From positions 67,332,001 to 67,396,000 of the forward strand of contig OZ296651.1 in assembly GCA_965655095.1 (NCBI GenBank): a DNA stretch of 64,000 bases, given 5' to 3'. Below are positions 3,085 through 18,246 of the stretch, piece by piece (positions within the stretch are counted from its first letter, which is position 1; the number at the start of each line of letters is the position of its first letter). A program made the position numbers and the translations under genes. Origin of the DNA: Haplodiscus bocki. Taxonomy: Eukaryota. The notes under the pieces were generated by a model. It was not told the origin of the DNA and ran no database searches. It was given only the letters and a program-made list of their open reading frames with translations.

Positions 3085-3487
3085 GAATTTGCTTTTTCGA
3101 ATAAGTTTGCAAGTTTTTGGACAATATGGCTAAAATAAATTTTAAGTTTTGGAAAAAAGTAATTTTAAGAGAAGTCTTTGAATAAGCATCTTTTTTTTTG
3201 AGCATCTACAATCATTTGCGAAATTTCTGGTTTAAACTGGAAAATTTACCGACTTTAAGAGGAATCATTTTCTGATGCAATTTCCTCACTGTTTGAAGAG
3301 TTGATTAAAGCAAATAAAAAAGACTTTCGAAAGCTTTTTCACTAAGCTTTCTATCAGTATCTTTGTTTACTCTCAAAGATTGTTATTTGCTTACCTATTC
3401 AACATTTTGCAATTCTATCCAAAAATGCTCGTTTAGAGCACCACTGTATACGCAAAGGGCGTGCCACAAACTTTTTTTTGGACAATC

Positions 3488-3563
3488 TGGAAGCAATGGT
3501 ACAATTTGGAAGCAATGGTACAAGTTGAAAGCAATGGTACAGTTTGGAAGCAATGGTACAATT
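3488..3563 (+). repeat. 19-bp minisatellite, 4 copies (TGGAAGCAATGGTACAATT)
   Basis: Units start at 3488, 3507, 3526 and 3545. Confidence 0.9.
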
Positions 3564-6715: not shown

Positions 6716-7530
6716 ACGGAAGTCTCAGTATACGAGAACGTCCTTTGAATTCAATTTCCATTAATGTTTCAAATGAATTTCTAAAAATTATGTTTTCCCA
6801 TCATTAAGATATATATTCTTTTCGGTAGCAATGTTATTTGTTAGGTCTCAATTTCAAACAATCGCACTTCATTTTGACTCACTTAGGCGTGTGTGTACTG
6901 TAAATGAGTAATATACATGAGCATTGTAAAGCAATTTATCGAGATTTTTTCTTGGCCCACATTTTCATGAAAAATTTCATTAAACATTGACCTTCAAATC
7001 GATAACATTTTCTCAGCAAAAGTTTATTTGATGAAAAATTCTTGGAATTATGGAAGGTATTGTCAATTATAGTTCATTACGAGGTTATTCCAACAGATTT
7101 ATACAACTAGAAGATAAAACGAGGGGGGTGTAACCCCTTTAATCGCATTGAGTCACGAGATACAACTTCTTTTGGGGTATTTAACTACTAATGAATTACT
7201 GCGTAAGACGCGGCGGCTACCTGAAAATTCTGCCGTGAAGCGTCAAAGCACTCCCAGCAAAAGTTAACTACATTTACAAAGTTTCTCACCTATTTTTCAC
7301 ATACTTCGAAGACAACAATCGAAGCCAAGATTTCCAACAAAGCCATCTGTGTTCCGCGGGAAGTTTCGTGTGGTTGGTGCCCACCAATTTTTAATTTTCT
7401 TTTTGCGAGAAGTTTCTCAACATACTCGGAGGTTTCAGATAATCAGCAAAATTATCAAGATTCGAAAAAGCAACAACATCTGAGAGGTTGTTTACGATGA
7501 CACGGAATAACAGTAGAATAGCAAGGGGGT

Positions 7531-7660
7531 TTAGAGCCACTTATGACTCTTTCCATATAAGGGCGTGCCGTTAGAGCTACTTATTGCTCCTCAATCTTAA
7601 TACGTTACCAACTCCTAGTTTAAGTTTAACTTCATGACAGCTCCAACAGTTTATCTAGTT
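7531..7660 (+). repeat. Left terminal inverted repeat of the Polinton-like element
   Basis: ttagagccacttatgactctttccatataagggcgtgccgttagagctacttattgctcctcaatcttaatacgttaccaactcctagttt...tatctagtt matches the reverse complement of 18123-18246. Confidence 0.93.
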
Positions 7661-8141
7661 TAACCCTGCGACAACTATGACAGTTGTTTGAACAAAAACA
7701 AACTCAAGTACGATTGGCATATTTTGAACGATGTCAAAGAGTTAAAAGTTTAACTTCTGTTAAATATGCAAAACTAACCTGAAAAATTTGATCCATACCA
7801 AGTTTACATTTGATATTTTCCAATGATCATAAACCAAGGGAAGCGCAAAGAATGAAAAATAATTGTTAATTTCAACTGTGAGGAGTCGAAAAAATCGACT
7901 TCCCACAGAAGAGACCAAATTGATGTTAAACCAGATCGCAGTTAGCACAGTCCAACAACCAAAGTACGTTGTTCTCGGATGACCACCAAAACAACGAGAA
8001 TGGCAATGGAACTGTGCTAGCAACAAAGTCAATTGATTTTGGAAAAAACCATAGAATGGAAAATTCAAAATTGCATAACCTGACAGGTCAACTGATAAGA
8101 GATGAGTGAAATCACTGACCATTCTACTGTGAAAATTCGCG

Positions 8142-9017
8142 ATGACAAGTGTGCTGAGAGAAGTTCCATCACAATTCCATTACTTGGTTTCCTCATCTAC
8201 TGAAGAAGGCGAATGGGAAGAGCACGAAGAGCCTCCTTTGAAAATAGTTAAGTATGCGAATGAGTTTCTGCAACCAAAACTGCCCAAAAGTTTTTGTTGC
8301 TTCCTAAAAACCCTGTTAAGCAGCACACATTGTGAATACAACATACGATGCCACAACACAGGAAATGTTTCTGAAACAGAAGATGTTTGTTGGAACTTTA
8401 CTGGAGAGCATTACCACATTTTCATCTACTTGAAAGCTTTCGTGGGAGCCGCAATCTTCATGAAGGAAAGCATCAGTGAAAATATCACAAGAGAAAAACC
8501 ACCTGTGAAAATTCGAAACACATTTGTCACGTTGTTTACAGTATCATATCCGGAGAACTGTTTAAAGAGAGAGGCAAAATATGGAGGCAACCAACTCTTC
8601 ATACATGGCGAGAGAATGAAATCGATGTTGCAAACTAAATCAACAAATGACTTGGGATGCAAACTTGAAAACGTGTGCGAATTACAGCGATCCTGTTACA
8701 CTGAGTTTGATGAGAATGAAGACGCCGAGAAAGTGTTTCATCTGCGCAGAAAATTGGCGGAGCTGCAGAATTCTAACGCAATTTTCAAAGATTGTGTGAT
8801 TGATTTTATCAATTTGCTTCAACGTGGTCTCGGGAACATCAACATTGCTCACCATAATAACGTTCTCAAAGTGCATCTTGGCTGTTCCAATGCCCAGTGC
8901 CAATGTTTTGAATGCACTGAAGCTTCACACACTGTTCTCGAGGGAATTGAGGGAAAAGATTTCAAATTTGATCCTAAATTGTTTTCTTTCATAGATGAGA
9001 ATGCTCAAAATGTGTAA
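8142..9017 (+). CDS. Intact 291-aa element ORF with HUH-like motif and C-terminal Cys cluster; function unproven
   Basis: Longest open frame in the window. Contains FTGEHYHIFIYL (H-u-H-u-u-u), downstream YPENCLKREAKY and C-terminal CSNAQCQCFEC. Confidence 0.6.
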   Translation: MTSVLREVPSQFHYLVSSSTEEGEWEEHEEPPLKIVKYANEFLQPKLPKSFCCFLKTLLSSTHCEYNIRCHNTGNVSETEDVCWNFTGEHYHIFIYLKAFVGAAIFMKESISENITREKPPVKIRNTFVTLFTVSYPENCLKREAKYGGNQLFIHGERMKSMLQTKSTNDLGCKLENVCELQRSCYTEFDENEDAEKVFHLRRKLAELQNSNAIFKDCVIDFINLLQRGLGNINIAHHNNVLKVHLGCSNAQCQCFECTEASHTVLEGIEGKDFKFDPKLFSFIDENAQNV

Positions 9018-9078
9018 CCAAGTAATTATAAATTGAAAACTAGACAAAAACAGTTGGTTTTCCGGATACGCGGTGATC

Positions 9079-9717
9079 ATGCGAAAAATAGTTGATGTAC
9101 AACAACTGAAAGACAATTTCAACCTAGTAGATTATCTTTTTCCGAAAAGTCCGAAAAATAAAAACGCTGTGCTGGCAGTTTGCTACTGTCCAGATAAAAA
9201 CGTAAACCTACATGATATAAGCGAATTCGCTCCCTATGCCGGGCTAATAGGTCCCGGCAAAAACTACACGGATCGTTCCTTGAGTTATTTTGAACTTTTC
9301 CGTATGCATGTGGTGTTTCACGACGCGTTTATATTCATGAAGAGTAATTTCGATTCAGGTTCGGGTTATGTTCACGCTGTTACAGAAAAACCGTTTTTTG
9401 TGAATAACATGCTGCTTGGAAATTTATCTAATTTAGCGTACTGGCTTTATCTGAAGTTGTTCCACGGAACACTTTACGAGCAGTTTGCATTCAAATCATT
9501 ACAAAAATTGGCGAGCTCGATGTCAGTTGCACTGGAGTTGCCTGCGTTTACCATGTCGCTACCTTTTTCCCAGAAAGTCTCGCTGAAGGCTTCTCTTTCA
9601 ACGCAAGATCCCAAAATTTTGATCGAGCGAAAAACCAATGGAATACAGTCGAATATTCGGCTGAGCTTAACTGAGCTAGCAAGACTAAACCAAACAATTC
9701 AAATCATATGCAACTAA
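9079..9717 (+). CDS. PLA2-like (parvovirus/adintovirus PLA2X-type) protein, possibly read through into a second small ORF
   Basis: PYAGLIGPGKNY...RMHVVFHDAF resembles the GPG calcium loop and HD dyad of viral PLA2. Adintoviruses are known to encode PLA2-like proteins. Confidence 0.5.
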   Translation: MRKIVDVQQLKDNFNLVDYLFPKSPKNKNAVLAVCYCPDKNVNLHDISEFAPYAGLIGPGKNYTDRSLSYFELFRMHVVFHDAFIFMKSNFDSGSGYVHAVTEKPFFVNNMLLGNLSNLAYWLYLKLFHGTLYEQFAFKSLQKLASSMSVALELPAFTMSLPFSQKVSLKASLSTQDPKILIERKTNGIQSNIRLSLTELARLNQTIQIICN

Positions 9718-9995
9718 TTAGCATTCACGAACCACTTATCACAAACGAAAGAAAAAACACTACGAGCTTGGCATCCCAAGTGACTGAGGAATCAACAATC
9801 AAGCCTGCAGCCGTAGATTTGGCAGATCACGTAAACTTGAATGATTTCATCTTCGATGCTAATGAAACAGAAAGACCTCCATTTCAGTTCAATTGCGGCT
9901 GCTGTTCGGACAAAATTGAATGTAACCGTTCCTTTACAGTACTTTTCTTTTATTATTTCATCACTGGTGCGATTGTATTCTTCTCCATTGCCTAG
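9708..9995 (+). CDS. Small element ORF with Cys cluster and C-terminal hydrophobic (TM-like) segment
   Basis: CGCCSDKIEC followed by FTVLFFYYFITGAIVFFSIA; overlaps the upstream stop in compact viral fashion. Confidence 0.35.
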   Translation: MQLISIHEPLITNERKNTTSLASQVTEESTIKPAAVDLADHVNLNDFIFDANETERPPFQFNCGCCSDKIECNRSFTVLFFYYFITGAIVFFSIA

Positions 9996-10084
9996 CCAGC
10001 TTTCGCTGAGAACAGTTCTATGCAAACTGGGATTATCGCCGTTTTGTCAACGTGCATCGGTTACTTGGTACCAAAAAGAAAACA

Positions 10085-10724
10085 ATGAATAAGCGCATTC
10101 GCACTAACCCCCATTACTGCAGTTCCTTTATAGGACCGTGCGGGAGCGGCAAAACGCAATTAGTATCGTTTATGTTGGAGAACGAAATAAAAATTTTTCA
10201 ACTATGTTTCGATAAAATTGTTTACCTACAAAATCATTACCAGAAGCAATTCGAAACCCTCTTGGTCACCTGTCTCCGTGAAAAGCATTCCATCGAGTTT
10301 CATCAGGGCCTTGTTTGGTCAGCAGTTGAAAAATGGGATGCTCGAAAACTGAGAACACTTGTGTTAATTGACGATTTGTACCGACAGCTCTGCGAAGATG
10401 ATTACTTTCTAAACTTGGTAATTGTGGGAAGACATCGAAAAATTCATTTCATTGCACTGAAGCACAATCTTTCCTCAACAACCAAAGACAATCGAAATGA
10501 GTGTTACACAGATGATTTTGTTCACGAGCCCCCGTGACGTGGAAGATAGGTTTGCTCGGCCGACAGATGGGAGATGGACAACTACTAATCGACGCATATA
10601 AAAAAGCAACACAGCCCCTCTCGGTCATTTGATCGTTGACTTTGATTCGCACACGGATGCTGAAATAAAATTCTGCTCCAACTGCTCAGGAACTGGACCA
10701 GCAGTTTTCTTTGTGTCCAAGTAA
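10085..10724 (+). pseudogene. A32/FtsK-like packaging ATPase of the Polinton, frameshifted
   Basis: Walker A IGPCGSGKT, FDKIVY, Walker B LVLIDDL and arginine finger GRHRKI. After a frameshift: ILFTSPRD...IDAYKKAT...HLIVDF. Confidence 0.9.
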
Positions 10725-10744
10725 TACCAGGAAAAACTTGACCA

Positions 10745-11077
10745 ATGAGTCAACAAGAGCTGTATTTGTTTGAATTTTGGGTGAACATAAAACCAATCGT
10801 TAGGCGTTTAAAAAAGTTTTTTTGTTCAAAATGAAAATTAAAAATTTTTCTGTAACTGTCTTTTCGACAGTGTCAGTGGGCATATTGCAACGGCTGGGGA
10901 TGTTTCCAAGTAAGAATTCGAAAGGCACAGAAGACTGATAGAACTTTTATGGAACAGGAAAGTGGGATTAATGCGAAGCGACAAATTTTGTCAGCTAGCC
11001 ATGAATGGAAACTGCTCGCTTTGATACAACCTTCGATTTCACGTCACTTAGAAATACGCCATGGCATCGAGCAGTAG
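10745..11077 (+). pseudogene. Small Polinton ORF remnant downstream of the ATPase
   Basis: Broken frame giving FCNCLFDSVSGHI...KRQILSA...LLALIQPSI; position and pattern resemble small Polinton accessory genes. Confidence 0.4.
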
Positions 11078-11739
11078 GACAAAAGAATTCATCCATATAA
11101 CACACGATGAATACTCATTGTTTGTAGCAAGCAAAATCTCAAACTACAACCACACTTTCGTGAACCCCAATCACACTAGAACTAGGAATCCGGAAACTCG
11201 TGCAAAAAAATAATCTCAAAAACTCAATCGATACTCCTCAAGATTTCCCAAAAGTATCAGAATGAGCGCAAAAGAATTTGAAAACAAGGCGCGGCAAAGC
11301 AGCAACGAGTACTGTCTCTGACGCCAAACGAATCGAGGACGCAGCGACAGCTGTGAAGTCAGAACATGTTATTTTAGAACTTTTCTCTTGCGGGTTGAGT
11401 GCCGGCAAGGTCGAGCGAGTCCCAGAAATCCTTACAAAAATCAGCAATAGTGAGCATGTTTCTAACAACAACGTTTCTGGGAGAATATGCCTAAACGACA
11501 CAGACACAGGATTGGCAGTTTTAGATTTTCTTTTCAATTTCTAAATACCTACTAAAAAGATTGACGATTTAAGCCCGGACTTGGTGAGACGGTTGCGTTT
11601 ACCAGATTATCTTCTCGCAAACCTTTTTGTTATGAAAGTGGCGTCATAAATGAAAAGTAGCTGAAACGAAGACAATGAAAACCCATTCAAATCATATCTT
11701 GGACCCAATATTGAACACGCCAAATGGCTGCGTCTATAA
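11061..11739 (+). pseudogene. Polinton ORF remnant of unknown function preceding the integrase
   Basis: MASSSRTKEF start, ILELFSCG...EILTKISNS...LAVLDFLFNF, ending KWLRL*; interrupted by stops and frameshifts. Confidence 0.45.
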
Positions 11740-12034
11740 TGAAGTAAACAACCACAACTGTCAAAATCATCCTACGGTTCGGGCGGCAGTTTTAGTTTAT
11801 CATGGTTAAACGACGAAAGAAACGCGCCAAAAATACAGTTGTGACAACTGTCAAAAACCTTTCAGAAAAGGATCTCGAAAAAAACCTTCCATTTGTTTCA
11901 ACGTTTGCGGTTGGGTTCATGACAAATGCAGTGGTTTGAAAACTGTAACCGAGTACGAGAGATATAGAGGGGAGAATTTCTTGTGTTCAAAGTGTTCAAG
12001 ATCGCGTCGGTTGGTTCCAGGACTCAAGAAACGA

Positions 12035-13032
12035 TAGCATACAGTAAGCTACATAACATATACACGTCCTGTCAAAATCCTGCCTCCTTTGGAAGTCGGA
12101 GTTCCCTAACGAAGGAGTCAAATTGCACCTTCAAACAAGTTGACGATTTCCTACGAAAAAGTGAAACCTACACAAACTTTGAACATGCTCGCTGAAACAT
12201 CACAAGACTAAAAGTTCGAAGTTACTGACACAATGAAATCTGGCCAATTTATTTGGCTGATATGCCGCAGCTCTTGGAGTCCAATCAGGGAATAACGTTT
12301 CTTTTCGTTGCAATGGATACACTCAGCCGATTCGTGAGGGTTTTTCCGTTTAAACGGAAAACAGCAGCAGCCTGTTGACAAGCTCTGATTGATGTCAATG
12401 TGGGCAATAGACGGCGTTCTAAAGTTTTGCGATCTCAGTCCTGCGGTGGATCTAGGCATGTATAACCAAGCCCGGAAAAAAATTGGGTAGAAAGGCCGGG
12501 AAATTGCACGCGAGTTTGCCAACTTTTGTCAACAATCGGGCATTCATATCCATTCGACTTGTAGTGAAACCAAATCGGTGTCTGCTGAAAAGAACAATAG
12601 ATCAATCAAAGCTCTAATTTTGAAAAATCGTCACGGAAACAACACTGAAGTGTATCATGAACAATTACAAGCATTGGTTGACATCATCAATTCTAGAATC
12701 AACCGAGTCATCAAGTTGGCGCCAAACCAGATGAAAAACTCTAACGAAACGTTTCTAGTATCCTTACAAGTTTGTAGTGCCATCAAAAACCAAAATTTAA
12801 ACTCGGACAAAACGTTCGCATTCGGCATAAAACAGATCTTTTTCTTCGTGGATATCGCATCCAATTTACTGAAGAGGTATTCCATATTGCAGCAGCGGAA
12901 ACACTGAATCCCCCCAGTTGTTCACTCAGCGATTGCAATATTCAGTTGACTCAAGGAAAATTCTACGAGAACGAGCTATTAGGATTCGAGAAAGACAACG
13001 AGCAGACCACCCAAAAAATTGCTATAAGGTGA
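12035..13032 (+). pseudogene. Polinton retroviral-type (rve) integrase
   Basis: PASFGS, LADM, VAMDTLSRF, STCSETKSVSAEKNNRSIK, NSRINR..KLAP, PKFKLGQNVRI, FTEEVFHI and GKFYENEL across several frameshifts. Confidence 0.9.
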
Positions 13033-13035
13033 AAG

Positions 13036-14025
13036 ATGAGTCAATAGCAAAGTTTCACCTTTAACTTGGTCTCTAACTCTTCCAAGTCAACGTTTCCCGA
13101 TAACACGCTCGCTAAATTCACAACCTTACTGCCACAATCCCTGGTCCTCCGCGGTACATGGGAGATTGCTTTGGTGGAGTTACCATGGCCCGGCTTCTTT
13201 GAAAACGTGACCGGTCTGTTCAGTTATCAACTTAATCAAAATGAACAAAACCGTGATAGATCAAAACAAGAAACTATTGTTGAGCGGCCGCGTTTTCGGT
13301 AACGGGATGGTTTCCGTGTATGTTTCCAGGAAACTGCTGAAACGGAACAGTTCTACGCTTGAATAAGAATTTTCAGCAGAGAAGTTTTTTGCATAACGAA
13401 AAGCCGTTACAGTTCGCTCAACTCTATCCTCCAATCCATGTGCGACAACCTCTGCAGCAGTTTTGGCTGGGATCTCAGTCAATTGCCACTGAGCTGGAAT
13501 AACTGCGAAGCATCCCAGTTACTGGACCTCAAACTCAGAACGACTTCAAATAAAGAAAAGAAAAAAATTCGACTCAAAGCCGTTTCCAAAGCTTTGAAAA
13601 ACACTCGGTTTGGAATATTTAGTTGACTGTAGTCAAACGAATGATGACGCCAAACAGCCTGAAGTAAGTCATGGTTTAGAGGTCTCGCATGACTGTGAAA
13701 ACCCAAACAAGTTGAAAGACGCGGCGAAATGAGCGTGCAAATTGGTAACTATCCTGTTGATTTAACAGCAGGATGTTACACTATGTTTGTTTACTGTGAT
13801 TTGGTTCAAAACGAAATACTCGGAGACACACAAGCAACACCACTCAGGGCCGTACCACTTGGTGACAACAAAAAACAGCGAATGTTCAGCAGAATTCAAT
13901 GGCGTCGAGTGATAGAGTCTTCAATTCATTCATTAACCATTGCTCATCGAAATGACGCAGGCGGTCTCTTTTTTTTCAGTCCAGGAAGAACAAACTTGAC
14001 GTTGTAATTTAGACTAACAAAATAA
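13036..14025 (+). pseudogene. Polinton minor capsid protein (penton)
   Basis: N-terminal LVSNSSKSTFPDNTLAKFTTLLPQSLVLRGTWEIALVEL and C-terminal MFVYCDLVQNEILGDTQATPLRAVP...GRTNLTL. Confidence 0.85.
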
Positions 14026-14176
14026 ATTCCAGCGCAACAGACCAAGATTTTTGCTTTCATTGTGTTTGTTGTAGTCTTCCTTCTTAGCTACAGCGTGCTT
14101 TTTTCTAAACTTCGCTAATTTCCTCAATCTCTAAAATGGAAGTTAGATGAAGCAGTCGTGCTCCTTGTAGGCAGCT

Positions 14177-14204
14177 TCCATCCATCCATCCATCCATCCA
14201 TCCA
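14177..14204 (+). repeat. (TCCA)7 microsatellite
   Basis: Seen directly. Confidence 0.95.
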
Positions 14205-14322
14205 ACTAACAGAAACATTTGTCCGTTCATAATCTGTAACAAGAGCCCGTCGCAGAACAGCATCTTCTCTACTGTGGTCGTTGGGAAAAGAAACAAGGAG
14301 GTAAAAAGAATGAGATAGATTA

Positions 14323-14914
14323 ATGTATGCTCACTTTGCCAATCAAATCTGGCAAAAGACGGTTCGAACTCCCAATGTAGTCACTTTGAGCGGGCCTGCG
14401 CGTCAGTATGGATCTGGAGGATTGGGTGTCTTCGCCATGCGTATGAGCCGCGTGGCGATGCCTTTGGTGAAACAGTACGTGATACCTGTGGCCAAAGAAT
14501 TTTGAAAGAATTTATTATCGGCATTTGTGCCGAAATCTCAAACGCTATCTCGGGTACTAAAAGACCAAAGACTGTGCTGGGGGGGAACTTGAAAAAAGCG
14601 CTTCAAAACCATTGCTGCGACCACCTCTGCCGCCGGTTCTTCAAAAAGACTTAATGATCGCGCATATGCATAAAGAACCAATCGTAAGTGTATCTGAGAT
14701 TGTGCAACCGATTGCCACGCCGCGGCGGTTGGCGTGGGACAGAGCGGCCGGGCGATGGCCGAGCGATGGAGCCAGCAGGCAGCGGGCGGGGAGCGGGCCG
14801 TCATCTGGGTGGCGAACACGAGACAAAAAAGTGGAAGAAGTCATTGACAGGAAAAAGCTTGCTGCCAGAAGTCGGTCCGACATACTCTCTGGTGTGGCGT
14901 TCAACACCAAATGA
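14323..14914 (+). pseudogene. Small basic virion core-like protein (adenovirus pVII/pX-like)
   Basis: SGPARQYGSGGLG followed by an amphipathic segment (MPLVKQYVIPVAKEF), with an Arg/Gly-rich tail ending RSRSDILSGVAFNTK. Lies between penton and major capsid genes. Confidence 0.6.
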
Positions 14915-16313
14915 ATAACCTGATTGGCAAGCATCACATAACGAAGGAAGGAGTGATGAATACCAGCAGTAGCAACCAAAACCTCTAGTTTGGAGCCTCA
15001 AGTGAAATTGCAAATCCCGTCACCCACAGCGCTCTAGACTTTGAAAGACTGTCGGTACTGATAAGTTACGACGCAACCTTCGATCAAGAAGTCTTTCCTC
15101 ATGTATATTGCGGAGGGCCCCGATTTGATTTTTTTGTCACATCAGACACTAAAAACTGCATTGATTTGAACAGAATTTGTTTGGGATAGGACGTAAATTT
15201 ATACAGCGCGGATGTAAAAGATGCTGCAACACTAACAATTTACTTTTTGCAACAACAAGCTACACTCTTTGTTTTCACACGTTGAATTAGTTCTGAACGG
15301 CAAATTGATATCCAGTAGCAACAACAACTACCATCACGCTGCCTTTGTCGAAACAGAATTAACAACAGACCTAGTTAGCTAAAGGACAAGGACCGTTTGC
15401 CACGGCTACCGTTATCGAGGAAACAAAGAAAAAAATCCAAAAGTGAAAATTAAAAGTATGCAAAAGTTTGCTGATAATGGTACCTGCTCATTTTACCTCT
15501 ATGAAGCTCCACTTGTTGAATTTTTGGGTTGCGAGCGGTTTCTACTGCCAGGCGTGACACTTCACTTGCGCCTCTATCGATCGCCCAACATTTGCGCTTT
15601 GCAAAATTTGACCGATTTGGATGCAGGTGCAATTAAAAGTCCTGATAAAAAACCGTCCGTTGTTGTAATTGAAAAAGGGTCCCTGTTTGTAAACAAAATT
15701 GTCTTGTCGGATACCGTGAAACTTAGCTTTGAACGGACGCTCACGAAGAGTTGTTCGGTATATCCGTACATTGAAAGTTCAACAAAAAATTTTATGATAC
15801 AATCCGGACAGAATTGCTTTGTGAAAAACATCCTTGACAGTGAGCCCATTAGTCATTTAACAATGTGCACGGTTAGGAATCGTTTTTTTTTCGCGGACCA
15901 ACGACGGCTTCAACGCCCTTCACTTTTGAAAAATTTGACCTGCAAAAGGTCGAGTTAGTGAGAGGAAACGGTTTACCAATAACGGGGACGCCATTGGATA
16001 CATCTAACGACACACGTTTGTTTTACAATACCATAACAGCTGCGGGATTCGAACGTGGCGGCAACAGCATCATTACCTTGCAAGACTATCAGGGTAACCA
16101 TTTCTATCTAGTTTTCGACCTAACATCAACAAGAGAAGCTAGCAAAAGTTTGATACTTTTCGCAAAGTGACAGGAGCAGGAATATCATTGAAATTGTTTT
16201 TCAGCTAAGCTTTACATGAGGCAGTCGAGTTATTTCCAGTTGGAGAAAGATTCAGTCAAGTTTTTGACAATTCTCGAAATATTTCAAAGAACTCGCCGTT
16301 GGCCATTAGATAA
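14911..16313 (+). pseudogene. Polinton major capsid protein (double jelly-roll)
   Basis: NNKLHSLFSHVELVLNGKLISSSNNNYHHAAFVETEL, FLLPGVTLHLRLYRS, YPYIES, GNGLPITGTP and FYLVFDLT, with several stops and frameshifts. Confidence 0.88.
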
Positions 16314-16940
16314 CTTTAGTTTAATTCAATTGGCGGACAACTGCTGTCCCAAACGTTTCAAAACAGTTATTGGTGTGGCTTCGTTTGACAACTCCTTTTC
16401 GGATCGGGACTTTGAGGAATTACTAAAAACTCCTGTGACAGCTGGCCAAAAATAAATCTATCAAATTGTAAACAGTGCAGCCCAGACAGAACGGGATGGC
16501 ATTGAGTTTGGCTGTCATACATTTTAAGTGATCCTTCAAAAAAGCATGCTCTATGGTCTAGTGCTGCAGTAAAAACGAATATACTATGGGATCCTCTCGG
16601 TGAGCCCATCAAAAGTGACAAAAAATACAAAAACGATTAGCTGCCTTTTCATCGAGACCGATCAGAGCATTTGAGATGATTTTCCTTATGCAAAACCCCA
16701 GTTCTAAGTTGTGCGGACTGTACTGTTTGTTTAAGGCCCACTACTTTTATGAAATTCACTTTGCTGAAAACGTCTCTACGTTCTTTTGTAAATGAAGGAA
16801 AAGCTTCACATCAAAAATACAATATTTCACCAAACAATCCCTTTCCAAACTAACAACTGCTTCGGAGATTGACATTGTACGTTATTTCAATTTGTATTGT
16901 AAATGTAATTTTGGATATAAGGTTTCTTATACTCAGAGTA
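16306..16940 (+). pseudogene. Adenain-family (adenoviral-type) cysteine protease
   Basis: IVNS...GWH*VWL (catalytic His), WDPLG (Asp) and QNPSSKLCGLYCLF (Gln and catalytic Cys) in the expected order. Confidence 0.85.
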
Positions 16941-18122
16941 ATTTTGATAAATAAATTTTCCTACTAATTGTCAGTGTCACTTCTATCACTATAGAGAACA
17001 AGTTTACATCTTCTATTGGCGGACGCTGAAATATCATCGTTACTAGCACTATCACGGAAATTTTCATCACCATCATCAACAATCGACTCTAACGCCTCTC
17101 ACTCAATGAAAGGACACGTATTGCTGGGTTCAACCTGTTCAGCTTCTGCGACCACTTCATCGAGACGGTCCAATTCAATGCAATGCTCATCCTTATCGAT
17201 GTCTCAGTAGGGAGGTTGCTGGAAACCAGCATCCGGAGGCGCTGAAATTCACGAATCTTTGAATTCCAGAGAAATGAAAACCAATGATGAGAAAGAGCAA
17301 TTCAATCTTTCTAACAAAAACAGTCGTGATGTTGCACGAAAGAGTGTAAAGTTGGCGGAGTTGCGCGTTGGCTTTCATCTACGTCTGTGTCACTTGAAGC
17401 ATTGTTGGAGTAGTAGGAATTTTTATTATCACTTCCATCATCGCTTTCACTGAGCAGCGGGGAAACGTCGGATTCTGAGAAACACAAAGAAAAATTTATC
17501 AAGGTTTTAGACTGTGAACGTTACCACAAAATGTGAAAAAGAGATTAACCACTGCAGCTTGACTGTCCCTCAATTTTGTAAAGGCCGTATGCGAGCGAAT
17601 AAATGCCGTCATTACCGGAAGACTGAAGTCAGCAAGTGAAAACTGCGGCCAACAAAAAACAAATAAATGAAACTCAGTGACTGTGCTTTCACATCACAAT
17701 GATCCTGCCGATTGGAGTAAGCGATTGAGATCGTCAAATCGTCCGCCATGTTCACTCGCTTGCTTCATTCATTGCGCCTGATCATAGTGACTGAAAAACG
17801 TATCATTAAAAAGAATTGAACCGATTGAAAATTTGATCTGGCGATCCGGCAGAACTGTTTGCTAGTAGAATTGATTTCAATCGGTGAATTTTTTTCAATG
17901 TTCCTCTATTTGAGCTCAATTTTATAAAATTGAGGCAAATGCGCTCTGATTTTTTTCAAATTGGTCAAATTCTTTAAATTCGTTTCGGTAAACTGGATTC
18001 CAATAAGGAATTAATTCAGAACACGATGAAGCTTGAGCATTTTCATCAGTATTGGTATATTATTCGATATTTGAACCACAGCGAAACCTTGAGTTCACTG
18101 TTTGAAATCTGTCAGAAAGTTC

Positions 18123-18246
18123 AACTAGATAAGCTGTCAAAGCTGTCATAAGGTTAAACTAGGAGTTGGTAACGTATTAAGATTGAGGAGCAATAAGTGG
18201 CTCTAACGGCACGTCCTAATATGGAAAAAGTCATGAGTGGCTCTAA
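18123..18246 (-). repeat. Right terminal inverted repeat of the Polinton-like element
   Basis: Reverse complement of 7531-7660 with few substitutions and a small indel. Confidence 0.93.

What the first reader, a model, noticed from the sequence alone, without database searches (positions are those of the whole stretch)
8142..9017. HUH-endonuclease-like ORF at the left end of the polymerase-less element
Seen: GEHYHIFIYL fits the HUH motif II pattern, candidate tyrosines follow ~45-55 aa later (YPENCLKREAKY), and there is a terminal CxxxxCxCxxC cluster; no Walker A/helicase domain. Known: HUH Reps nick terminal origins in parvoviruses, CRESS viruses and Helitrons. Inference: a Rep-like nickase could substitute for protein priming, which would make an integrase-plus-HUH Polinton-like virus a possibly undescribed combination. 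The motif III match is not canonical, so this may only be a metal-binding protein.
Basis: partly seen in the sequence, partly recalled or inferred. Interest (0 to 1): 0.8.

Follow-up and report, generated by a model that had tools for sequence, protein, structure and literature searches.

The report
HUH-like accessory gene of Mavericks
The ORF is a real, conserved, unnamed gene at the left end of a Maverick/Polinton virus-like element family; its front half may fold like a Rep/HUH nuclease domain, but it occurs alongside the element's own protein-primed DNA polymerase instead of replacing it, and the copy in this window is a decayed one that lost its polymerase gene by deletion.

Summary
Window 8142-9017 is an intact 291-aa ORF with the quoted motifs and no helicase. 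It is the first gene inside a TIR-bounded 10.7-kb element with no pPolB.

The protein belongs to an unnamed family (101 representatives, all 325 aa or shorter, no Pfam, PDB or PHROG match). H71, C83, H90, H92 and K108 are conserved down to about 20% identity. An AlphaFold model of residues 1-185 (pLDDT 79.6) has a ferredoxin-like fold, with HxH on the third strand and Tyr136 capping the next helix. Foldseek against viral models returns almost only Rep/NS1 proteins, but weakly. Against PDB nothing is significant.

Tyr136 is replaced by N, D, E or T in a distant clade that includes intact marine contigs, so a covalent HUH nickase is not a family-wide property.

The "replaces protein priming" idea is refuted. 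The homologue heads the same gene module, followed by a pPolB gene, in 8 of 11 relatives whose sequence reaches that position. These include the closest relatives (about 88-90% DNA identity). Every other gene of the window copy except ORF2 is broken.

Best reading: a metal-binding, Rep-domain-like DNA-end accessory protein that works with pPolB. Interest is moderate.

The parts
7512..18246 (+). Whole element: decayed, pPolB-less derivative of a Maverick/Polinton-like element (about 10.7 kb)
   Evidence: Inverted repeats. Homology to L004/L005 begins at 7512. All genes are collinear with relatives L002-L005.
7512..7673 (.). Left terminal inverted repeat. It starts with an AG-type terminus and holds two copies of a 14-nt motif (7531-7544, 7571-7584).
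   Evidence: arms 7531-7628 at 93%, extended to 7673 at 78%. (terminus shared with L004).
8142..9017 (+). ORF1, the finding: 291 aa, intact. The N-terminal ferredoxin-like, HUH-like domain (residues about 10-185 = 8169-8696) carries H71, C83, H90xH92, K108, S135 and Y136. The C-terminal part (about 186-291) carries a conserved H...QCxCxxC knuckle and an acidic-hydrophobic tail.
9073..9717 (+). ORF2, open in the window. It is homologous to the 132-138-aa second gene of relatives over 9079-9474. Unknown function. It always lies next to ORF1.
   Evidence: Fusion protein P0131.
9520..10085 (+). Two small conserved genes (75- and 113-aa homologues in L004). Each is broken by one in-frame stop.
10085..10718 (+). 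A32/FtsK-type packaging ATPase gene, broken (1 frameshift, 1 stop)
   Evidence: Pfam PF04665, E 1.3e-6, on ORF 10052-10537..
10766..11736 (+). Two conserved genes of unknown function (103- and 225-aa homologues), broken (together 1 frameshift, 6 stops)
11828..13014 (+). rve-type integrase gene, broken (3 frame changes, 5 stops)
   Evidence: Homologous to L002/L004 integrases, which carry PF00665..
13042..14013 (+). Gene in the minor-capsid (penton) position, broken (11 in-frame stops against a 37%-identical query; approximate count)
   Evidence: The position is by analogy with the vertebrate Maverick module order (PMC8097293).
14323..14621 (+). Gene in the PW position, broken (1 frameshift, 1 stop, about 40% of the query not found)
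14956..16292 (+). Gene in the major-capsid position, broken (3 frame changes, 6 stops)
16306..16951 (+). Gene in the adenain-like protease position, broken (2 frame changes, 3 stops)
   Evidence: Weak PF00770 match on the L007 homologue.
16952..18109 (.). Stretch between the protease-position gene and the right repeat. Relatives carry a minus-strand pPolB gene of up to 1421 aa here. This copy has no pPolB-coding similarity (one large deletion).
18110..18246 (.). Right terminal inverted repeat. At its outer end it is about 19 nt shorter than the left arm.

Best explanation
ORF1 is a bona fide, conserved accessory (probably early) gene of an unannotated Maverick/Polinton lineage. That lineage replicates with its own protein-primed family-B polymerase.

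The protein has two parts:
- An N-terminal ferredoxin-like domain resembling the nuclease/origin-binding domain of Rep (HUH) proteins. It has a conserved metal-type site formed by H71, H90, H92 and possibly C83.
- A C-terminal His/Cys3 zinc knuckle with a conserved acidic-hydrophobic tail.

Most likely the protein binds, and perhaps processes, DNA at or near the element's terminal repeats. It would do so as a helper of pPolB-driven replication or of early expression, not as a replacement for it. This function is inferred, not shown. Covalent Tyr-mediated nicking is at best a property of the window's clade.

The copy in the window is a dead one. The pPolB gene is deleted and ten other genes are broken. 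ORF1 and ORF2 are still open here by survivorship.
For: Real gene:
- 39 word-search homologues and 101 representatives at E<=1e-3.
- dN/dS is 0.27-0.53 among close copies.
- The gene holds the same first position in 13 related loci.
- It is identical at nucleotide level in three independent marine samples, next to intact genes.

Fold:
- Residues 1-185 model at pLDDT 79.6 and pTM 0.79, with topology b1-a1-b2-b3-a2-b4-a3. HxH lies on b3, H71 at the end of b2, and Y136 at the cap of a3.
- The BFVD Foldseek search gives 3 hits at E<=1e-3. The named top-50 hits are Parvoviridae NS proteins (probability up to 1.0), a microvirus replication initiator, a Cressdnaviricota Rep and a rudivirus Rep.
- The best PDB hit of the full model is an AAV2 Rep origin-binding domain (E 0.053).

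Conservation: H71 40/46, C83 41/46, H90 40/43, H92 39/44, K108 43/46. The H...QCxCxxC motif is kept in distant members.

Works with pPolB:
- A pPolB gene follows the module in L002, L003, L004, L005, L007, L010, L012 and L013.
- The terminal-protein role is already assigned to the N-terminal domain of polinton pPolB (PMC11161782).

Dead copy. In three decayed copies found through capsid-gene fragments rather than through ORF1, ORF1 is present but broken.
Against: - No sequence or profile match to any Rep, HUH or other family.
- No Foldseek hit to a solved structure at E<=1e-3. The domain-only model mostly returns generic ferredoxin-like domains, with HUH entries scattered among them at probability 0.15-0.5 and TM about 0.3.
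- A Cys among the putative ligands is not typical of HUH sites (own knowledge).
- I could not read model coordinates, so the clustering of H71, C83, H90 and H92 in space is inferred from strand positions only.
- No hairpin or iteron arrangement typical of Rep origins was found in the termini.
- DNA binding itself is not shown by anything here.
Confidence: 0.45

Rival explanations
1. One reading: ORF1 is an HUH nickase that initiates replication at the terminal repeats in place of protein priming. This would define an integrase-plus-HUH, polymerase-less Polinton-like virus.
For: The window element and L001 are TIR-bounded, about 10.6-10.7 kb, and lack pPolB. The HxH is conserved. HUH replicases are known in other Polinton-like groups (bioRxiv 10.64898/2026.06.19.733378; 10.64898/2026.10.13.758929).
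Against: - The closest relatives, L004 and L005 (ORF1 83-85% identical, DNA 87-92%), carry pPolB. The window aligns with them on both sides of the missing gene.
- 8 of 11 informative relatives carry pPolB.
- There is no helicase partner.
- Tyr136 is not conserved.
- The window copy is dead.
Confidence: 0.03
2. ORF1 is an active Tyr-dependent HUH nickase in the window's clade and acts together with pPolB. For example, it could cut at the terminal repeats of an integrated copy so that free ends become available for protein-primed synthesis. The distant clade would have lost or changed the nucleophile.
For: Y136 is present in 35/45 sequences. It is invariant in the 17 full-length members at 40% identity or more, and sits at the N-cap of the helix after b4. 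The spacing from HxH (44 residues) is in the Rep range (own knowledge). The three-His site recalls relaxase-type HUH sites (own knowledge). Named BFVD hits are Rep/NS1 proteins.
Against: - The distant clade has N, D, E or T at this position and has no other Tyr conserved in all members. It includes the compact, intact L007-L009 contigs.
- The neighbouring S/T135 is better conserved (39/45) than Y136.
- Structure matches are weak.
Confidence: 0.17
3. ORF1 is not related to HUH enzymes. It would be a zinc-binding early regulatory protein (a transcription or host-interaction factor, comparable in role to the unnamed 'Adintoc' or 'Oncoid' accessory genes of adintoviruses) whose N-domain merely has the very common ferredoxin-like fold.
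For: - The Cys/His pattern is conserved (C83, H71, H90, H92; H...QCxCxxC).
- The gene lies in the flanking accessory region next to the TIR, as described for vertebrate Mavericks (PMC8097293).
- PDB Foldseek returns many unrelated ferredoxin-like domains at the same weak level as HUH entries.
- Adintovirus accessory proteins with paired Cys motifs are described (PMC8502044).
Against: No LxCxE motif was seen in the aligned family. Named BFVD matches are strongly enriched for Rep/NS1. HxH followed by hydrophobic residues on a central strand, plus a third ligand on the adjacent strand, is the HUH arrangement.
Confidence: 0.27
4. ORF1 is the terminal (priming) protein or the single-strand DNA-binding protein of the pPolB replication system.
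For: The gene is conserved, sits at a genome end, and co-occurs with pPolB. S/T135 is conserved, and Ser, Thr or Tyr are priming residues in other systems (own knowledge). A zinc motif plus a C-terminal tail recalls adenovirus DBP in outline only (own knowledge).
Against: Structural work assigns the terminal protein to the N-terminal domain of polinton pPolB (PMC11161782), and the 1421-aa pPolB gene of L007 is long enough for that. No fold or sequence match to any terminal protein or DBP was found.
Confidence: 0.06

Closest known systems
Rep-class HUH endonuclease / origin-binding domains (parvovirus NS1 and AAV Rep N-terminal domain, CRESS-DNA virus Rep, RepB of pMV158, rudivirus Rep)
   Same: Ferredoxin-like domain of similar size. 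H-u-H followed by hydrophobic residues on a central strand. A third conserved ligand on the neighbouring strand. In the window's clade, a Tyr at the start of the following helix. These proteins are the named fold matches.
   Different: - No sequence or profile similarity.
- The Tyr is not conserved across the family.
- There is a conserved Cys near the site.
- There is no SF3 helicase or oligomerisation domain; a small Zn knuckle takes that place.
- The gene sits in a linear dsDNA element that has its own pPolB.
- Matches to solved structures are not significant.
Maverick/Polinton elements and adintoviruses (Preplasmiviricota)
   Same: TIRs with an AG-type terminus, an A32-type ATPase, an rve integrase, a capsid/protease module in the order integrase, minor capsid, PW, major capsid, protease, and pPolB in relatives (PMC8097293).
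   Different: The window copy has lost pPolB and is decayed. pPolB lies alone on the opposite strand at the right end. The ORF1-ORF2 pair is not among the named Maverick or adintovirus genes in the papers read. The capsid-position protein has only unnamed homologues.
Polinton-like viruses that use an HUH/Rep replicase (mriyavirus-like groups; a group with circovirus Rep-like nickases)
   Same: DJR-capsid-type small dsDNA elements that combine an HUH protein with, in some groups, an rve integrase.
   Different: In those groups the HUH protein is the replicase and pPolB is absent. Here the HUH-like protein coexists with pPolB and has no helicase.

Membership tests
HUH endonuclease superfamily (Rep class) | HUH motif: two His separated by a hydrophobic residue on a beta-strand, followed by hydrophobic residues, and conserved in relatives | tested here: met
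   H90 40/43 and H92 39/44. Positions 93-95 are hydrophobic. The motif lies on strand 89-97 of the model.
HUH endonuclease superfamily (Rep class) | Catalytic Tyr (Y motif) on a helix downstream of HUH, conserved in relatives | tested here: inconclusive
   Y136 is present in the window protein and in 35/45 sequences. It is N, D, E or T in the distant clade (P0077, P0078, P0090, P0096), and no other Tyr is conserved in all members.
HUH endonuclease superfamily (Rep class) | Third metal ligand near the HUH pair | tested here: inconclusive
   H71 (40/46) lies at the end of the adjacent strand, and C83 (41/46) is also conserved. Spatial proximity could not be measured because no coordinates were available.
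HUH endonuclease superfamily (Rep class) | Fold match to solved HUH domains | tested here: inconclusive
   PDB: no hit at E<=1e-3. AAV2 Rep OBD is the top hit at E 0.053 for the full model, and HUH entries have probability 0.15-0.5 for the domain model. BFVD: 3 hits at E<=1e-3, and named hits are almost all Rep/NS1.
HUH endonuclease superfamily (Rep class) | Sequence or profile membership in a Rep family (Pfam, PDB sequences) | tested here: not met
   No Rep family at E<=10 in 21 members. Profiles A1 and A3 find no Rep chain.
HUH endonuclease superfamily (Rep class) | Site-specific ssDNA cleavage with a covalent 5'-phosphotyrosine link | not testable with these tools
   Biochemical property.
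Maverick/Polinton (self-synthesising element / polintovirus) | [quoted passage not shown] | tested here: not met
   Absent from the window. Present in 8 of 11 informative relatives (PF03175), so the lineage qualifies and this copy is a deletion derivative.
Maverick/Polinton (self-synthesising element / polintovirus) | rve-family integrase | tested here: met
   Window 11828-13014 is homologous (96-98% coverage) to integrases that carry PF00665, but is broken.
Maverick/Polinton (self-synthesising element / polintovirus) | A32/FtsK-type packaging ATPase and adenain-like protease | tested here: met
   PF04665, E 1.3e-6, on the window ORF. The protease is supported only weakly (PF00770, E 0.005, in L007).
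Maverick/Polinton (self-synthesising element / polintovirus) | Double jelly-roll major and single jelly-roll minor capsid proteins | tested here: inconclusive
   Genes lie in the expected positions, but there is no Pfam, PHROG or PDB sequence match.
Maverick/Polinton (self-synthesising element / polintovirus) | Terminal inverted repeats with AG-type termini and a 5-6-bp target-site duplication | tested here: inconclusive
   TIRs and a left AG terminus were found. The right arm lacks its outer end, so no duplication can be read.

The most novel reading that the evidence does not exclude
A whole lineage of pPolB-bearing Mavericks from a marine, metazoan-type host carries, as its first gene, a derived Rep/HUH-superfamily domain fused to a zinc knuckle. 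In the window's clade it may still be a nickase. It would act on the terminal repeats of integrated copies to provide the free DNA ends that protein-primed replication needs. It would also be a physical link between polinton and parvovirus/CRESS-type replication modules.
Probability: 0.15. Interest if true: 0.7.

Novelty: new variant of a known kind. Interest (0 to 1): 0.4.

Why it matters
How an integrated Maverick/Polinton regains free ends for protein-primed replication is not known. Most genes in the flanking accessory regions of these elements are also unassigned. A conserved, end-proximal protein with a Rep-like metal site would be a concrete candidate for terminal-repeat recognition or processing. 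It would also add an HUH-like domain to the repertoire of pPolB elements. Bidnaviruses show that polinton and parvovirus modules have met before (PMC4061559 and PMC8502044, as listed or read).

On the negative side, the result removes a tempting false lead. The 'polymerase-less integrase-plus-HUH virus' is an ordinary deletion derivative.

Tried and rejected
- Pfam, PHROGs and PDB-sequence searches of ORF1 and of family profiles found nothing relevant. The best PDB-sequence hit, a Tctex1 dynein light chain at E 0.016 over 44 residues, was judged to be chance.
- Terminal-protein role: rejected on the literature.
- 'ORF1/ORF2 are selectively kept in decayed copies': raised because this copy has no stop or indel in them while all other genes are broken. 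It was weakened by three copies found through capsid fragments, in which ORF1 is broken, and by a dN/dS of about 0.65 on the window branch.
- Rep-origin-like hairpins or iterons in the termini: none beyond a twofold 14-nt motif.
- Naming the lineage through its capsid-position protein: 129 homologues, none named. Cluster look-up gave no names either.
- Host identification: no Rfam hit and no informative Pfam hit in the flanks. Only a BEL/Pao-type retroelement beside L001 points to a metazoan-type genome.
- AEP-primase and HIT readings of the His motif were considered and dropped. No conserved acidic DxD-type pair and no third His in register were seen in A2.

- One search printed tblastn pieces with coordinates and frames for the broken genes.
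- One search printed alignment bounds around the missing polymerase gene.

I stopped printing such tables afterwards and gave counts and outer bounds only. I do not repeat those places here, and nothing was deleted.

Full report
1. THE OBSERVATION

Window 8142..9017 (+) is an ATG-started ORF of 291 aa with no stop. There is no P-loop, no helicase and no Pfam, PHROG or PDB-sequence match.

The window looks eukaryotic, with only 11 ORFs of 130 aa or more in 64 kb.

The ORF is the first gene inside an element bounded by inverted repeats at 7531-7628 and 18149-18246 (98 nt, 93%). Homology to relatives begins at 7512 with an AG-type terminus.

In one sequence the motif is weak evidence. HuHuuu appears in 1.2% of shuffles of this protein.

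2. THE ELEMENT

The genes downstream of ORF1, all on the + strand, are:
- ORF2;
- two small genes;
- an A32-type ATPase (PF04665);
- two genes of unknown function;
- an rve integrase;
- genes in the minor-capsid, PW, major-capsid and adenain-like protease positions.

This matches the second module described for vertebrate Mavericks (PMC8097293).

Relatives found through ORF1 homologues have the same order. Beyond the protease gene they carry a minus-strand pPolB gene: PF03175 in L002, L003, L004 and L010, and a 1421-aa gene in L007. Copies found through capsid fragments add L012 and L013 with pPolB.

In all, pPolB follows the module in 8 of the 11 relatives whose sequence reaches that position. 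It is missing in three:
- L001, which is itself TIR-bounded at about 10.6 kb;
- L006, which is decayed;
- L011, where two unrelated long ORFs lie there.

The window has no pPolB similarity anywhere.

Its closest relatives, L004 and L005, are 87-92% identical in DNA along the whole element and do carry pPolB. The window aligns with them on both sides of the missing gene. The window copy is therefore an internal-deletion derivative, not a different replicon type.

It is also dead. By tblastn piece counts (approximate):

| Gene | Breaks |
|---|---|
| Two small genes | 1 stop each |
| ATPase | 1 frameshift, 1 stop |
| 103/225-aa pair | 1 frameshift, 6 stops |
| Integrase | 3 frame changes, 5 stops |
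| Minor-capsid-position gene | 11 stops |
| PW-position gene | 1 frameshift, 1 stop, part missing |
| Major-capsid-position gene | 3 frame changes, 6 stops |
| Protease-position gene | 2 frame changes, 3 stops |
| pPolB | deleted |
| Right repeat | outer ~19 nt missing |

Only ORF1 and ORF2 are open.

3. THE PROTEIN FAMILY

The word search found 39 homologues down to 40% identity, all unnamed and without Pfam domains. Because the protein was still open after that, I ran the exhaustive profile search. It found 101 representatives at E<=1e-3, all 325 aa or shorter and none fused to a helicase. Cluster look-up gave no names.

In 46 aligned sequences the best-kept positions are:
- K108 (43/46);
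- C83 (41/46);
- H71 (40/46);
- H90 (40/43);
- H92 (39/44);
- S/T135 (39/45).

The C-terminal H...QCxCxxC motif and the tail are kept even at about 20% identity.

Y136 is invariant among the 17 full-length members at 40% identity or more and present in 35/45 overall. It is N, D, E or T in the distant clade (P0077, P0078, P0090, P0096), and no other Tyr is conserved in all members. That clade includes L007-L009. These are compact contigs with all genes intact, identical in ORF1 at nucleotide level in three independent marine samples.

The gene evolves under constraint: dN/dS is 0.27-0.53 among close copies.

4. STRUCTURE

The full-length model is confident only in residues about 10-185. A domain-only model from 46 sequences reaches pLDDT 79.6 and pTM 0.79.

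The topology is b1(11-22)-a1-b2(64-72)-b3(89-97)-a2-b4(123-134)-a3(137-148), a ferredoxin-like arrangement. HxH lies on b3, H71 at the end of b2, and Y136 at the N-cap of a3. In solved Rep nuclease domains the HUH pair also sits on a central strand and the Tyr on a neighbouring helix (own knowledge).

Foldseek results:
- Against BFVD: 3 hits at E<=1e-3. The named hits in the top 50 are almost only Parvoviridae NS proteins (probability up to 1.0), a microvirus replication initiator, a Cressdnaviricota Rep and a rudivirus Rep.
- Against PDB, full model: best hit is an AAV2 Rep origin-binding domain at E 0.053.
- Against PDB, domain model: mostly generic ferredoxin-like domains, with AAV2 OBD, SIRV1 ORF119 and RepB among them at probability 0.15-0.5. 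Nothing reaches E 1e-3.

The fold evidence is therefore suggestive, not decisive.

5. WHAT IT MOST LIKELY IS AND DOES

Shown:
- It is a conserved first gene of a pPolB-bearing Maverick lineage.
- It has a ferredoxin-like N-domain with a conserved His/His/His(/Cys) constellation.
- It has a conserved Cys/His knuckle.

Inferred:
- The domain descends from, or converges on, Rep-type HUH domains.
- The protein binds, and perhaps processes, DNA at the element's ends or controls early functions, as a helper of pPolB replication.

The terminal-protein role is already assigned to the N-terminus of polinton pPolB (PMC11161782). A Tyr-dependent nickase remains possible for the window's clade only.

6. 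WHY ORF1 IS OPEN IN A DEAD COPY

ORF1 and ORF2 show no indel against L004/L005, while the other regions show 2.5-10 gap openings per kb at similar identity. This looked like selective retention. Three points weaken it:
- The window was picked for its open ORF, and the first loci were fetched through intact ORF1 proteins.
- About half of the close hits are fragments.
- In three decayed copies ascertained through capsid fragments, ORF1 is broken every time.

Survivorship is the simpler reading. A census would settle it.

7. COMPARISON WITH WHAT IS KNOWN, AND NOVELTY

HUH replicases combined with rve integrases are already described in Polinton-like groups without pPolB. Unassigned accessory genes flank Maverick cores. 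Adintovirus papers list unnamed conserved genes and Cys-rich 'Oncoids'. In the papers I could search, no HUH-like gene is described in a pPolB-bearing Maverick.

I rate the element as an ordinary decayed member of a known kind. I rate the ORF1 family as a possible new variant of a known kind, with moderate interest.

- Relatives were read as they stand.
- No known animal-virus comparator was fetched. Named comparators are only those returned as hits by the tools.
- Two early script outputs printed piece-by-piece coordinates for broken genes and for the region of the missing polymerase gene. I count that as a slip. I changed to counts and outer bounds afterwards and do not repeat the places here.

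Noticed in passing
window 8142-9717: ORF1 and ORF2 have no stop, frameshift or indel against L004/L005, while every other gene of the same copy is broken at similar DNA identity (87-92%).
   Followed up: partly
window 7531-7544 and 7571-7584 (mirrored in the right arm): Each terminal repeat holds two copies of a 14-nt motif 40 nt apart, also present in L004. These are possible protein-binding sites. Seen by eye; the repeat finder missed them.
   Followed up: no
L001 9169-19749: A second TIR-bounded (211 nt, 91%) pPolB-less element of about 10.6 kb from a different sub-lineage (ORF1 43% identical), with most genes in one frame. This suggests that polymerase-deleted derivatives arise repeatedly.
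   Followed up: partly
L007 1-11248, L008, L009: Compact contigs with all genes intact and a 1421-aa minus-strand pPolB gene. ORF1 is identical at nucleotide level in three independent samples, one of them a TARA Oceans scaffold. Either a circulating virus or one widespread host.
   Followed up: partly
L011 12435-16018 (minus strand): Where relatives have pPolB, this copy has two long ORFs (481 and 711 aa). They have no Pfam or PDB match and no BLASTP similarity to the lineage's pPolB. Nature unknown.
   Followed up: partly
P0131 (325 aa; alignment A2): One database protein joins the C-terminal half of an ORF1 homologue to an ORF2 homologue. This underlines that the pair is always adjacent.
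   Followed up: no
L001 59-6695: A BEL/Pao-type LTR retroelement (DUF1759, RVT_1, RNase H, rve) lies beside the element. This points to a metazoan-type host genome. The host was not identified.
   Followed up: no
window 7510-7519 and 8121-8130: A perfect 10-nt inverted match between the left terminus and the stretch just upstream of the ORF1 start codon. About 0.2 such matches are expected by chance in this region, so it is probably chance.
   Followed up: no
window 3482-3563; 25461-25718: Short tandem arrays (19 nt x 4.3; 28 nt x 2.4). The second lies within a 43-nt inverted-repeat pair. They are unrelated to the element.
   Followed up: no
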